The notes under the pieces are model-generated. The model saw nothing but the letters and a program-made list of their open reading frames with translations. It was not told the DNA's origin and made no database searches. 51,526 bases of DNA from Polymyxa betae A26-41 (taxonomy: Eukaryota > Protista > Endomyxa: Phytomyxea), in contig RBZT01000316.1 in the NCBI GenBank assembly GCA_003693705.1, positions 1-51,526 of the forward strand, written 5' to 3'. Shown one piece after another: positions 1-41,551 of this stretch (within the stretch, counting starts at the first letter, position 1; each line of letters starts with the position of its first letter). The translations under genes and the position numbers were made by a program.

Positions 1-34
1 CGATTTCTGGGACGATTTCTGGGACGATTTCTGG
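1..34. repeat. 12-bp tandem repeat (CGATTTCTGGGA), about 3 copies, encoding QKSS repeats on the minus strand
   Basis: Directly visible at 1-34. Confidence 0.85.
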
Positions 35-174
35 AAAGCCGCAGCACCAATAAACCAAGCCAGAAGGACGGCGCCGATCCCCGAGACGATCTTGAAAACG
101 AGCGGCCAGTTTATCTGCGGCAGCGTCGACGTGGACTTCTTAAGGGTCTTGGATTTCTTGGATTTAGAGGCCAT
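1..174 (-). CDS. 5' part of a predicted type II membrane protein (runs off the window start)
   Basis: ATG at 174 opens MASKSKKSKTLKKSTSTLPQINWPLVFKIVSGIGAVLLAWFIGAAAFQKSSQKSSQKS: basic N-terminus, one hydrophobic helix, then a QKSS repeat. Frame is open to position 1. Not in the ORF track. Confidence 0.65.
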   Translation of the reverse strand, partial: MASKSKKSKTLKKSTSTLPQINWPLVFKIVSGIGAVLLAWFIGAAAFQKSSQKSSQKS

Positions 175-39288: not shown

Positions 39289-41551
39289 CTATCGTAGCAC
39301 TGGACGGATGAATATGTCTTGGCAAGACATACTCAGGAATGTCAACACCACAAAATCTGGATTAACCAAGGCAATCTTCTTTAACCATTCTGAAACCAAA
39401 GTTCAGAAGTAATGAACAATTCATCTGCATTGATCACCTTTACAAGCTCCACACCTAAACTCTGGTCAGTCTTATTTTGATTGTGACAATAGAATGTATA
39501 CGGATTAATAGGGTTTTGAGCCCTGAGACGCGATGGAATCTGTTTTGCTGTTGAATGTCTCATAGTTTGAGATCTTGTAGGTCGATCTTGAAATCTCAGA
39601 TCATCCCATGCATCTGCAACTGTTGTAGGTTCTGCTGATGAAATCGATATTGATTGTGTTGTCACTGCTCAATAATTAATGTCAGTCTGTACGAAGGTGA
39701 TAACAGAACCTTGATCCCAGGACAACTCACTATCAGTATAATCCAGAGATAACGACAGAACTGCAATGGCTTTCATATCGAACCGTCGGATCGTCTTTCC
39801 ATAACGTGTGAATAACCCAGGTAAACATGATATTAAGAGTAGTTATTACTGGGTCATACGCCAGGGCGTTGCCGATAGCATTACGTTCTGCACATAAACT
39901 CCCAGTTGGCATTGACACCTAATCAGTGTCTGAATTGTGATTCTCAATAAGATGATGTTGTACCTCGATGTTGATTCCAGAATAATACACGGGGATACCA
40001 TCTGATTTGATAACTTGAAGAACGCTCAGTACAGGTTGAAACGATTTTCTCATCCAAAATTTCTTCAGTTCATTACCACCAGAGCGACATGTATTCCAGA
40101 ACTGTATCCATCACTAAAGCGTAGACGAAACTGATCGAATTACCTCTTGCTTCCTTTCGATCATTTTCTCTACTAAATCACTCAGAAGAAAAGATTGGAT
40201 ATCTGATACTGGAACAGACGGATTCGACTCGACATCGTCGAATGCCAAAAATTCGATGTCTCCAGACCAAAGCTTATTGATATTTGGCCACCCATACCTA
40301 CAGCGAATTTCCGATTAGCTTTTACCACATACTTCAAAACAGAACATACCAAAACGTTTTCACTTCGGATATGTGCAAATAATCAGGTCGAAACTGTCTG
40401 AGACTTTTGGTCTAATCAGGGACTGCTCTAAAAGAAGTCTTGTTACAGCAAACCTTGACATGAGGGCTGTAGTCCGAGCTACAGTTCCAGGTTTCAAAGC
40501 GACCATTAATGAGAAACGAGCTGGCCAATCTTCACCCAGGACCTGGGCTAGCTCGCTACGTTTAACATTGATTAAAGGTGCCAATGACTACGTTCAAGTA
40601 AATTTTGATTATGAATGCAGTGTTGCATTTCCTGCCTTTTGGATAAAATTAACATTGGCGCCAAATACAAATAAACCTGGACCAGAATCCACAACCAGAG
40701 TTTGAATACCCCTTGAAAAGTAAGCAATGCTGTCATAATTGATTACCAAATAAATCATTTAACAAGGCATTGACATGACCGACCTCATAATAAATAATCT
40801 AATGAGCTCACCTAATGCAGCAGTAGAATTCCCTCTCCAATCGTGCTCAGGTGTTCTTTTAAGTATTATAAATCGAAAACTGACTATCAATTGAAGCAAA
40901 TCCAAGTTAGTTACCTAGCAGTTCCCGATCCAGACACCAGATACAGAAATTTCTTCCTTTTGATACAGTCTGTTTCAGTAATTGCTGAGAAATGCAACCA
41001 TGCAGGTAATACTAGATAGCTGTCAATGTATAACAGCGCCGACCGAAAATATGATACTTATAGCAATTAGAGGGAAATAAACAGCGATAACTGAGACTTC
41101 AATGTTGTCCAAATCCTGCCACAATCCGCTAAAAAATTCAGCATTGAAATGGCATTACGCTTTACTTTGGACAATTCTTCGTCACGACTACGAAGCCTCC
41201 AATCCTTTAATTCACCACCAGGAATTGCTGGCGTAAACTCTATTCCGATCGGTGCAGATTCACATACCGAAGACTCGGGATGAGGTACCGACAGAATCTT
41301 ATGCTGGGACTACGAACATATAAGATCTTCCTACAACTGCTTGGAATTTTGATTTCCGAGCCAACCTGGAGAAAATGAGATTGTAATCTGGAACAGATGG
41401 AATCGAAGCTGGAATAATGGGGCCTTGCTAGGACTTTGGCCTGGTTTGATAGCTGCAGACAGACGTTGATGTCGGCATGGGTGACAACATAAGATAGGAG
41501 GGTGTATAGTGGATGGTGGAATGGTTCATAGGTCTCTAATCCTGTCACCAT
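39289..41551 (-). CDS. Cytidine-deaminase-fold protein with an N-terminal Rossmann-like (possibly CARF-like) domain
   Basis: C-terminal half: KFWMRKS..PVLSVL..YSGINIEVSMPTGSLCAERNAIG.AL and NPINPCGACKEWL.KI (CAE plus PCxxC Zn motifs). N-terminal half: KFLYLVSGSGT..NST; IQTLVVDS; FSLMVALKPGTVARTTAL. Confidence refers to the deaminase call. Confidence 0.82.

What the first reader, a model, noticed from the sequence alone, without database searches (positions are those of the whole stretch)
39289..41551. Deaminase fused to a CARF-like Rossmann domain: possible ligand-gated deaminase effector in a eukaryote
Seen: an intact Zn-dependent cytidine-deaminase-fold domain (SLCAERNA; PCGAC) after roughly 250 aa of alternating beta/alpha sequence: KFLYLVSGSGT..NSTAALGELIRLFI / IQTLVVDS..F..NVNFIQKSL..LI / FSLMVALKPGTVARTTALMS / DLIIC. 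Knowledge: CARF domains, especially the Sso1393/APE2256 ring-nuclease type, show a strand-S/T-helix, a strand plus F..GL..L helix, then a hydrophobic strand with (T/P)G.K/R before a helix and a last short strand. CARF-effector fusions are activated by cyclic oligonucleotides in prokaryotic immunity. Ordinary eukaryotic cytidine deaminases are small single-domain proteins. Inference: this may be a second-messenger-regulated nucleotide or nucleic-acid deaminase (defence or signalling). The gene has many introns, so it is a long-resident eukaryotic gene and not contamination. The CARF assignment is pattern-level only.
Basis: partly seen in the sequence, partly recalled or inferred. Interest (0 to 1): 0.82.

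Follow-up and report, generated by a model that had tools for sequence, protein, structure and literature searches.

The report
Protist deaminase with CARF-like sensor domain
This is a real, intact, single-copy protist gene for a known but uncharacterised kind of cytidine-type deaminase, and its front half is predicted to fold like the bacterial CARF signal-sensing domain; CARF has not been reported in eukaryotes as far as I could check, and nothing here shows which signal, if any, it senses.

Summary
The gene at 39289-41551 (minus strand) is real. It has 15 exons, 14 introns of 42-72 nt and 508 codons, is single-copy, and is colinear with full-length orthologues from Spongospora (61% identity) and Plasmodiophora (54%).

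The C-terminal third is a PF14421 "LmjF36.5940-like" CDA-clade zinc deaminase with intact CAE and PCxxC motifs.

This architecture is not new. Iyer et al. [quoted passage not shown]

What is new is what that domain looks like. An AlphaFold2 model of the orthologue's N-domain (pLDDT 88, pTM 0.87) has solved CARF domains as its top 20 matches in an exhaustive structural search (Z 12.5-8.4), and whole minimal CARF cores align. The best non-CARF match scores Z 8.4 or less. An ESM Atlas search agrees.

Sequence-level tests for CARF are all non-significant. Only a "TGGTKPM"-like loop after strand 4 is shared.

Bacterial homologues (mostly Myxococcota MAGs) are stand-alone genes with no CRISPR or cyclase neighbours.

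The fold-level CARF call is therefore supported. Gating by cyclic oligoadenylate is not.

The parts
39289..41551 (-). Whole coding region: 15 exons, 508 codons plus stop. Exons: 41551-41366, 41309-41166, 41115-41058, 41011-40915, 40855-40784, 40711-40636, 40587-40454, 40403-40350, 40297-40144, 40101-39964, 39918-39850, 39794-39731, 39664-39502, 39454-39438, 39389-39289.
   Evidence: Phase-consistent model with AG acceptors and GT donors, plus one GC donor. Colinear with P0001 (Spongospora) over residues 32-538. Per-exon identity is 61% to P0001 and 54% to P0004.
40144..41551 (-). Exons 1-9: N-terminal CARF-like Rossmannoid domain of about 320 aa, with an insertion of about 125 aa between strand 1 and strand 2.
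   Evidence: AF2 model of the orthologous P0001:1-338 has pLDDT 88 and pTM 0.87. The top 20 VIA-align hits are all CARF domains, Z 12.5-8.4. The Atlas search agrees. A profile of the family's N-domain hits window 40456-40857 (E 6.8e-16) and 40346-40408 (E 1e-5).
41462..41509 (-). Predicted CARF strand 1 and its polar loop (LYTLLSYVVTHADINV). Bacterial homologues read hhhHN(V/I)GHH(D/E) here.
   Evidence: In the model strand E31-39 is the first aligned element against VC1899, Card1 and Can2 residues 1-2. Alignment A4.
40456..40515 (-). Predicted CARF strand 4 plus the motif-II-like loop and helix (FSLMVALKPGTVARTTALMS). G and R are near-invariant in the eukaryotic family. Bacterial members read S-x-S-T-G-T-x-P-M, against Card1-type N-x-T-G-G-T-K-P-M.
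   Evidence: Conservation in A2, A3 and A4. Card1 CARF sequences. hhalign picks exactly this segment, but with probability only 2%.
40350..40403 (-). Exon 8 (LRQFRPDYLHISEVKTF): predicted strand 5 and a conserved basic residue.
   Evidence: tblastn to P0001 is 86% identical in this frame. 16/17 identity.
40588..40635 (-). Intron 6, the only GC-AG intron.
   Evidence: The junction FIQK|SLAPL matches P0001 FVQE|SLTSL.
39289..40143 (-). Exons 10-15: PF14421 (LmjF36.5940-type) CDA-clade zinc deaminase domain. A low-confidence insert of about 45 aa lies between the two zinc motifs.
   Evidence: Pfam hits on the exon pieces, on the own genome and on the orthologue, residues 339-536 at E 4.6e-48. Foldseek prob 1.00 to mouse, human and yeast CDA. 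Insert 446-489 has pLDDT below 50.
39877..39900 (-). SLCAERNA: first zinc ligand (Cys) and catalytic Glu.
   Evidence: Invariant C405 and E407 in A3.
39438..39454 (-). 17-nt microexon encoding (P)CGACK, with the two remaining zinc-ligand cysteines.
   Evidence: 5/5 identity to both orthologues.

Best explanation
An intact, single-copy, intron-rich gene of a plasmodiophorid (Rhizaria). It encodes a protein of about 508 aa from the known LmjF36.5940-like (PF14421) branch of CDA-type zinc deaminases.

Shown:
- The C-terminal domain has the complete catalytic apparatus: CAE, PCxxC and the CDA fold.
- The N-terminal domain of about 320 aa, previously called only an 'uncharacterized Rossmann-fold domain', is predicted with high confidence to contain a complete CARF-type core carrying a large insertion.
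- The two-domain protein also exists as an intron-less stand-alone gene in bacteria, mostly Myxococcota MAGs.

Inferred:
- The CARF-like domain is a divergent member of the CARF superfamily, or a sister to it.
- It uses the conserved polar loops after strands 1, 2, 4 and 5 to bind a nucleotide-derived small molecule or an RNA end.
- Through that binding it controls or targets the cytosine deaminase. This would resemble the way the CARF domain of Cad1 gates an adenosine deaminase, but with a ligand that is probably not a Cas10-made cyclic oligoadenylate.
- The substrate is most likely a cytosine nucleoside or nucleotide, because the catalytic domain is closest to free-nucleoside CDAs and no canonical tetrameric CDA was detected in this genome.
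For: - PF14421 hits.
- Orthologues and exon model.
- All 120 listed homologues carry both domains.
- The N-domain model is confident.
- Exhaustive structural search: the top 20 are CARF proteins. Examples are Csm6 9w3u, VC1899 1xmx, Can2 8q3y (all Z 12.5), Card1 6wxw (12.4), SSO1393 3qyf (11.7), Sso2081 7ygh (10.7) and Cad1-CARF 9c68 (9.4). The whole minimal CARF is covered: VC1899 residues -1..131 give 133 aligned at 2.8 A, and Can2 8bao gives 122 at 2.4 A. The first non-CARF folds score Z 8.4 or less.
- In Foldseek, the weak matches with the highest probability are also CARF (Cam1 0.93, Sso2081 0.85).
- ESM Atlas rows are Csm6, Cas02710, Csa3_N and CARF_Card1 clusters, plus a bacterial PF14421 cluster.
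- The loop after strand 4 resembles the Card1 TGGTKPM motif.
- The deaminase is closest to tetrameric CDAs.
- The gene is single-copy, and no TIGR01354-type CDA was found in the genome.
- Cad1 precedent: PMC12669630, listed.
Against: - No sequence-based method links the domain to CARF. Pfam, PADLOC and PDB profile searches are blank or give one isolated weak hit. hhalign probabilities are 2% and 0.1%.
- The motif-II lysine is absent in bacterial members. In eukaryotes the conserved Arg is shifted by one or two positions.
- No ligand-producing enzyme is linked.
- The model is of the Spongospora orthologue, not of the window's own protein.
Confidence: 0.45

Rival explanations
1. The N-domain is a Rossmann-like domain that only resembles CARF, by convergence or very distant common ancestry. 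It is not a sensor. It would be an oligomerisation scaffold or a second enzyme acting with the deaminase in pyrimidine nucleotide metabolism, for example a hydrolase using the conserved His/Asp/Ser/Arg/His/Lys residues.
For: - All sequence tests for CARF are non-significant.
- Conserved His- and Asp-rich loops (HNxGHHD in bacteria) look more catalytic or metal-binding than typical CARF motif I.
- A MazG-type NTP pyrophosphohydrolase lies next to the gene in two bacterial loci.
- Housekeeping-like pattern: single copy, and vertical inheritance in oomycetes.
- No other CDA was detected in the genome.
Against: - Twenty different CARF structures outrank every other Rossmannoid fold by up to 4 Z units and are covered end to end.
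- The atlas search gives the same families independently.
- The strand-4 loop resembles Card1 motif II.
- The MazG linkage appears in only two related loci.
Confidence: 0.3
2. It is a nucleic-acid editing or mutating deaminase, as Iyer et al. 2011 proposed for the family. The CARF-like domain would recognise an RNA feature such as a 2',3'-cyclic-phosphate end, as I recall being reported for the RtcR CARF domain (my own knowledge, not checked here), rather than a free second messenger.
For: - Kinetoplastid members replace the N-domain with CCCH RNA-binding fingers, which suggests the N-terminal module targets nucleic acid (PMC3239186).
- A family-specific insert of about 45-95 aa lies between the zinc motifs.
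- Makarova 2014 notes that CARF families lacking the strand-4 Lys (RtcR, RV2818) may bind other ligands.
Against: - The catalytic domain is closest to free-nucleoside CDAs.
- No RNA-binding domain is detected in this protein.
- No editing phenotype is known.
- None of this is direct evidence.
Confidence: 0.15
3. One reading: a defence effector switched on by cyclic oligoadenylates, cGAMP or 2-5A made by a partner cyclase.
For: - CARF-like fold.
- Precedent of cOA-gated CARF effectors, including the deaminase Cad1 (papers listed).
- A few bacterial neighbours have a conflict-system flavour: a weak Macro hit, RHS repeats and DUF2357.
Against: - Ten bacterial loci examined show no CRISPR, Cas10, CD-NTase or other cyclase next to the gene.
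- Cmr2-type Cas10 is present in only 2 of 5 host genomes, and on other contigs.
- No SMODS was found in this genome.
- The motif-II Lys is missing.
- The gene is single-copy and vertically inherited.
Confidence: 0.07

Closest known systems
LmjF36.5940-like CDD/CDA-derived deaminases (Pfam PF14421; Iyer, Zhang, Rogozin, Aravind 2011, PMC3239186)
   Same: The Pfam model matches over its full length. The CAE and PCxxC motifs are the same. The two-domain plan, an N-terminal Rossmann-fold domain plus deaminase, is the one described for stramenopile, chlorophyte and Bdellovibrio members.
   Different: Rhizaria (plasmodiophorids) were not in the 2011 list. The N-domain was left 'uncharacterized' there, whereas here it is assigned a CARF-like fold. 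Kinetoplastid members carry CCCH fingers instead.
Cad1 / CAAD, CARF-fused adenosine deaminase of type III CRISPR systems (PMC12669630, PMC12993439)
   Same: An N-terminal CARF-type domain is followed by a zinc deaminase. Cad1-CARF structures 9c68 and 8z3k match the model at Z 9.4 and 9.3.
   Different: The Cad1 deaminase is a TIM-barrel adenosine deaminase acting on ATP, whereas this one is a CDA-fold cytosine-type deaminase. Cad1 is CRISPR-linked and gated by cA4/cA6. This family has no CRISPR or cyclase linkage and lacks the motif-II lysine.
Minimal CARF domains of Card1, Can2 and VC1899 (Pfam PF23400 CARF_Card1)
   Same: These are the best structural matches: Z 12.1-12.5, rmsd 2.4-3.5 A, 122-136 residues, covering the whole CARF core. 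The loop after strand 4 is similar (TGGTKPM against STGTxPM).
   Different: There is no significant sequence similarity. This domain has an insertion of about 125 aa after strand 1 and a 34-residue helix 3. The effector is a deaminase, not a PD-(D/E)xK nuclease.
   Same: Z 11.7, with the longest alignment among the best matches (182 residues, the longest of the 50 rows listed).
   Different: rmsd is 4.1 A and identity 9%. Ring-nuclease activity cannot be inferred.
Homotetrameric cytidine deaminases (mouse 2fr5, human 1mq0, yeast CDD1 1r5t) and blasticidin-S deaminase
   Same: Closest solved folds for the catalytic domain (Foldseek prob 1.00, TM by target 0.53-0.69). The zinc ligands are Cys-Cys-Cys in both.
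   Different: Those are single-domain proteins of about 130 aa. This domain has an extra N-terminal helix, an insert between the zinc motifs and the CARF-like domain.

Membership tests
LmjF36.5940-like deaminases (PF14421) | Match to the Pfam model above the gathering score (27.1 bits) | tested here: met
   Window exon piece scores 43.1 bits. Own-genome scan scores 60.8 bits at 39754-40083. Orthologue P0001 scores 164 bits over profile positions 4-217 of 218.
LmjF36.5940-like deaminases (PF14421) | C[H]AE in helix 2 and PCxxC in helix 3 (CDD/CDA-type zinc site) | tested here: met
   SLCAERNA in exon 11. P|CGACK across exon 13 and the microexon. These residues are invariant in A3.
LmjF36.5940-like deaminases (PF14421) | N-terminal Rossmann-fold domain, as in non-kinetoplastid members (Iyer 2011) | tested here: met
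   All 120 listed homologues align to both halves of P0001.
CARF superfamily | Rossmann-like core structurally matching solved CARF domains better than other Rossmannoid folds | tested here: met
   The top 20 of 48,161 chains are CARF proteins, Z 12.5-8.4. Non-CARF chains score 8.4 or less. Atlas rows agree.
CARF superfamily | Six-stranded core with strands 5 and 6 forming a hairpin (Makarova 2014) | tested here: inconclusive
   The order of secondary-structure elements is compatible: E31-39, E167-178, E214-223, E262-268, E289-293, E314-317.
CARF superfamily | Polar, usually S/T, residue at the end of strand 1 | tested here: inconclusive
   The loop after strand 1 reads V-T-H-A-D in the window, I-S-H-S-D in oomycetes and I/V-G-H-H-D/E in bacteria. 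It is polar and partly conserved, but His/Asp-rich rather than the usual G-x-S/T.
CARF superfamily | [DN]x[ST]xxx[RK] with a conserved basic residue just after strand 4 | tested here: inconclusive
   The eukaryotic consensus is D-G-x-P-A-R, with Arg invariant in A3 but at +5 rather than +6. Bacteria read S-T-G-T-x-P-M with no basic residue. It resembles Card1 N-x-T-G-G-T-K-P-M. Makarova 2014 notes that the RtcR and RV2818 CARFs also lack the basic residue.
CARF superfamily | Statistically significant sequence or profile similarity to a CARF family | tested here: not met
   Pfam scans of 103 eukaryotic and 10 bacterial N-domains at E up to 10 gave no CARF family. PADLOC gave one member at E 0.012 to Csx1/Csm6. 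PDB profile searches were blank. hhalign against 3 Card1 CARFs gave probabilities of 2% and 0.1%.
CARF superfamily | Homodimer forming a ligand pocket on the two-fold axis | not testable with these tools
   Only monomer prediction is available, and no coordinates.
CARF superfamily | Genomic or functional link to a cyclic-oligonucleotide synthase (Cas10 or similar) | tested here: not met
   Neighbours in 10 bacterial loci are heterogeneous: USP, DUF697, MBOAT, MazG, ribosomal protein L3, acyltransferase, kinase, E1 dehydrogenase, RHS and a weak Macro hit. Cmr2 is in 2 of 5 host genomes, on other contigs, and Csm1 never passes its cut-off. No SMODS was found in this genome.

The most novel reading that the evidence does not exclude
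This family is the first bona fide CARF-superfamily sensor found in eukaryotes. It would be a ligand-gated cytosine-nucleotide deaminase, the pyrimidine counterpart of Cad1. It was acquired anciently from, or is shared with, Myxococcota-like bacteria, and has been kept as a single-copy gene in oomycetes, plasmodiophorids and other protists. It would respond to a still unknown eukaryotic nucleotide-derived messenger or a damaged-RNA signal.
Probability: 0.2. Interest if true: 0.85.

Novelty: new variant of a known kind. Interest (0 to 1): 0.6.

Why it matters
CARF domains are the central second-messenger sensors of type III CRISPR immunity. The defining paper stated that they could not be detected in eukaryotes (PMC4012209).

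If the N-domain of this widespread protist family really is a CARF, two things follow. CARF-type sensing would extend to eukaryotes, including major plant pathogens such as Phytophthora, Albugo, Plasmodiophora and Spongospora. It would also pair a CARF with a CDA-fold deaminase for the first time, giving a testable parallel to the ATP-deaminating Cad1.

It also gives a concrete hypothesis for a domain left 'uncharacterized' since 2011.

If the resemblance is only structural, the gene is an ordinary member of a known family of unknown function.

Tried and rejected
- **SLOG/LOG or TIR identity of the N-domain.** This was my first guess, from the PGT...T loop. No such fold appears among the top 50 structural matches.
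Present only at Z about 7-7.4, well below CARF.
- **Ferredoxin-NADP reductase matches in Foldseek.** rmsd is about 15 A and probability 0.1-0.2, so they are spurious.
- **2H phosphoesterase.** PF13563 hit 41 of 103 members, with a best E of 7.5e-4. On full-length members scanned individually the hits were below threshold (13-15 bits against a cut-off of 27). They fall on a single H-x-T-x motif ('FHVTIA') on strand 4 of the oomycete proteins. That motif is absent in plasmodiophorids and bacteria, and the fold is not 2H.
- **ESM Atlas feature search of the N-domain.** It gave hexokinase at 0.86, below the 0.9 lead level. The Atlas's own model of P0001 is poor (pTM 0.36), so its structural rows (TIM-barrel enzymes) are meaningless.
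- **Word search with one exon.** Blank, as expected from the length window.
- **Papers not held.** Makarova et al. 2020 (PMC7498327) and Burroughs & Aravind 2020 (PMC7685563) could not be read. A later report of a eukaryotic CARF in those papers cannot be excluded. Searches of the held library found none.
- **Joined spliced protein.** Exons were searched by reference, and the database orthologue P0001 served as the full-length proxy.
Full report
**The observation**

The minus strand of 39289-41551 carries a multi-exon gene. I first scanned the stop-to-stop pieces by reference against Pfam. Two pieces hit PF14421 'LmjF365940 subfamily CDD/CDA-like deaminase', at E 5.3e-11 and 1.4e-4. None of the N-terminal pieces hit anything.

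A word search with the longest N-terminal piece was blank, as expected from its length window. I therefore used the one exhaustive search, with that same piece. It returned P0001, a 538-aa protein that a source names as Spongospora subterranea A0A0H5R4R2. P0004, from Plasmodiophora brassicae, is a second orthologue.

tblastn of P0001 against the window is colinear from residue 32 to 538. This let me fix a phase-consistent 15-exon model: 508 codons, introns of 42-72 nt, thirteen GT-AG and one GC-AG. Summed over exon peptides, identity is 61% to Spongospora and 54% to Plasmodiophora.

The window genome (27 Mb, 1001 contigs) is therefore a third plasmodiophorid. That is an inference, and I did not identify the species.

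The exons were never joined into one protein for any search or fold. P0001 was the full-length proxy throughout.

SLCAERNA and PCGAC are real. PCGAC is spliced over a 17-nt microexon. KFLYLVSGSGT, NSTAALGELIRLFI, IQTLVVDS, NVNFIQK|SL and FSLMVALKPGTVARTTALMS are also real exon sequence.

The stretch after ...ALMS is not protein. 'DLIIC' (40375-40389) is really ...RPDYLHI..., and that exon is 16/17 identical to the orthologue. The true first strand, LYTLLSYVVTHADINV in exon 1, was overlooked.

**The family and what was already known**

P0001 matches PF14421 over residues 339-536 at E 4.6e-48, and nothing else.

Iyer et al. 2011 (PMC3239186) defined this 'LmjF36.5940-like' branch of the CDD/CDA clade in kinetoplastids, stramenopiles, chlorophytes, Perkinsus and Bdellovibrio. 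Plasmodiophorids are merely a new lineage for it.

A profile search found 169 homologues, and all 120 listed align to both halves of P0001.

In this genome the gene is single-copy.

A quick maximum-likelihood tree of 40 eukaryotic and 10 bacterial proteins separates the two groups (SH-aLRT 97-99). Plasmodiophorids form their own clade. The oomycete clade follows the species tree (Saprolegniales, Albugo, Pythium, Phytophthora). This fits an old, vertically inherited gene. Many bacterial branches are long, so I draw no conclusion about a donor.

**What the N-terminal domain is**

I aligned 103 N-domains (A2) and predicted P0001:1-338 with AlphaFold2. The model has mean pLDDT 88 and pTM 0.87.

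Foldseek against the PDB gave nothing below E 1e-3. Among the weak rows, though, the highest probabilities belonged to CARF proteins (Cam1 0.93, Sso2081 0.85). The FNR rows had rmsd of about 15 A.

The exhaustive VIA-align search, which does not depend on Foldseek, was clear. Ranks 1-20 are all solved CARF proteins:

| Protein | PDB | Z |
|---|---|---|
| Csm6 | 9w3u | 12.5 |
| VC1899 | 1xmx | 12.5 |
| Can2 | 8q3y | 12.5 |
| Card1 | 6wxw | 12.4 |
| Can2 | 8bao | 12.1 |
| SSO1393 | 3qyf | 11.7 |
| Csm6' | 8pcw | 11.5 |
| Cdn1 | 8z4i | 11.2 |
| Sso2081 | 7ygh | 10.7 |
| Can1 | 6sce | 10.7 |
| Cami1 | 8phb | 10.3 |
| Csa3 | 6wxq | 10.2 |
| Cam1 | 8t64 | 9.8 |
| Cad1-CARF | 9c68 | 9.4 |
| Csx1 | 4eog | 8.4 |

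The first unrelated folds (KimA, the KCC C-terminal domain, NadM, USP, glycosyltransferases, SDRs) start at Z 8.4 and fall to about 7.

The minimal CARF domains are covered from end to end. VC1899 residues -1..131 give 133 aligned residues at 2.8 A. Can2 8bao residues 1..123 give 122 aligned at 2.4 A. They map onto model residues 31-322. The protist domain therefore contains a whole CARF core plus about 160 extra residues. Most of the extra is a block of about 125 residues between the first strand (31-39) and the strand KKFLYLV (167-178), together with a 34-residue helix before strand 4.

The ESM Atlas shape search independently returned two kinds of row:
- a bacterial 446-aa PF14421 cluster (TM 0.64);
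- clusters carrying Csm6_HEPN, Cas02710, Csa3_N, HFX_2341_N and CARF_Card1.

No SLOG, TIR or deaminase fold appears.

**Sequence-level tests**

These do not reach significance.
- Pfam at E up to 10 on 103 eukaryotic and 10 bacterial N-domains gave no CARF family.
- PADLOC gave one member at E 0.012 to Csx1/Csm6.
- Profile searches of all PDB sequences were blank.
- For a profile-profile test I fetched three Card1-type CARF genes from Myxococcota-phylum genomes and ran hhalign. The probability was 2% for the bacterial N-domains and 0.1% for the eukaryotic ones.

The single segment hhalign chose is nevertheless the one expected from the structure: helix 3, strand 4 and the following loop. There the bacterial members read L-S-x-S-T-G-T-x-P-M-I-x-A-L, against Card1's L-N-v-T-G-G-T-K-P-M-s-x-a-a.

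The CARF-defining lysine is missing in the bacterial proteins. In eukaryotes an invariant Arg sits one or two positions away (D-G-x-P-A-R; K-P-G-T-V-A-R in the window). Makarova et al. 2014 describe the CARF signature as S/T after strand 1 and [DN]x[ST]xxx[RK] after strand 4, and note that the RtcR and RV2818 families lack the basic residue and may bind other ligands.

My reading is that the fold is CARF-like with good confidence (about 0.8). Homology to the CARF superfamily is likely but unproven (about 0.6).

**Context**

A pattern scan of 185,579 prokaryotic genomes found 19 loci, mostly MAGs of Myxococcota or 'Deltaproteobacteria'. The loci with complete genes carry intron-less ORFs of about 390-510 aa, and one of 738 aa. 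The ten ORFs I scanned with Pfam (424-509 aa) all have the same two-domain plan. Several sit on contigs of 260-320 kb.

Their neighbours differ from locus to locus:
- USP
- DUF697
- MBOAT
- ribosomal protein L3
- an acyltransferase
- a kinase with FYVE
- an E1 dehydrogenase
- RHS repeats
- a weak Macro hit
- DUF2357
- a MazG-type NTP pyrophosphohydrolase, in two related loci

No CRISPR, Cas10, CD-NTase or other cyclase is adjacent. Cmr2-type Cas10 occurs in 2 of 5 host genomes, on other contigs, and Csm1 never passes its cut-off. The window genome has no SMODS match.

So nothing ties this family to cyclic-oligoadenylate signalling.

**The catalytic domain**

The full-length model (pLDDT 78.6, pTM 0.73) shows a canonical CDA fold with a disordered insert between the zinc motifs. 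Foldseek matches mouse, human, yeast and bacterial tetrameric cytidine deaminases and blasticidin-S deaminase with probability 1.00.

No TIGR01354-type CDA was found elsewhere in this genome. The caveat is that exon-split genes are hard to detect this way.

**Mechanism**

Shown:
- an intact CDA-type active site;
- a CARF-like N-domain with conserved polar loops at the C-terminal ends of its strands;
- conservation of the fusion from bacteria to protists.

Inferred: the N-domain binds a nucleotide-derived ligand or an RNA end and regulates or targets deamination of a cytosine nucleoside or nucleotide, in formal analogy to Cad1 (CARF plus adenosine deaminase).

I put 0.45 on this. I put 0.30 on a non-sensor Rossmann domain (a scaffold or a second enzyme). 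I put 0.15 on nucleic-acid editing with RNA-end recognition.

**Novelty**

The gene is a member of a known family with a known architecture. What appears new is the CARF-like identity of the N-domain.

The CARF-defining paper states that CARF could not be detected in eukaryotes. Searches of the held library found no later report of a eukaryotic CARF or of a CARF-CDA fusion. Makarova 2020 and Burroughs & Aravind 2020 could not be read, so prior notice cannot be excluded.

**Limits**
- RNA-seq confirmation was not possible.
- The structural evidence rests on a 61%-identical orthologue, not on the window's own protein.

Noticed in passing
window 38794-39000 (-): The next ORF downstream on the same strand begins with a peptide containing ...TPLHGGLSNKLFLVQV. 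From memory, this resembles the glycine-rich N-terminal motif of choline/ethanolamine kinases. It is probably the first exon of a separate gene.
   Followed up: no
window 40588-40635 (-): Intron 6 of the deaminase gene has a GC donor (GC-AG). All 13 other introns are GT-AG. The junction is supported by the orthologue alignment.
   Followed up: partly
P0045:263-322, P0036:239-299, P0014:555-620 (oomycete homologues): Forty-one of 103 N-domains give a weak PF13563 (2'-5' RNA ligase / 2H phosphoesterase) hit: best E 7.5e-4 in that scan, and below the Pfam cut-off (13-15 bits against 27) on the full-length members checked. The hits are centred on a single H-x-T-x motif ('FHVTIA') on predicted strand 4. 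The motif is absent in plasmodiophorids (FSLMVAL) and bacteria. It is probably a chance motif match, but it sits in the putative ligand site.
   Followed up: partly
L016:8796-9161 (-) and L017:7382-7747 (-): In two bacterial loci a 121-aa MazG-type nucleotide pyrophosphohydrolase lies divergently next to the CARF-like deaminase gene, preceded by an acyltransferase. The two loci are related, so this may simply be shared synteny.
   Followed up: partly
L001-L009 bacterial homologues, first 15 residues of the mature N-domain: Bacterial members carry a striking H-N-(V/I)-G-H-H-(D/E) loop after the first strand. It looks more like a metal-binding or catalytic motif than a typical CARF motif I.
   Followed up: no
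P0014 (Pythium insidiosum, 942 aa), residues 227-271: Some longer oomycete paralogues or orthologues carry extra N-terminal modules. One example is ankyrin repeats in front of the CARF-like domain. Other homologues of 800-940 aa have unassigned N-terminal extensions.
   Followed up: no
I found nothing linking it functionally to the deaminase. In bacteria the deaminase has no conserved neighbour.
   Followed up: no
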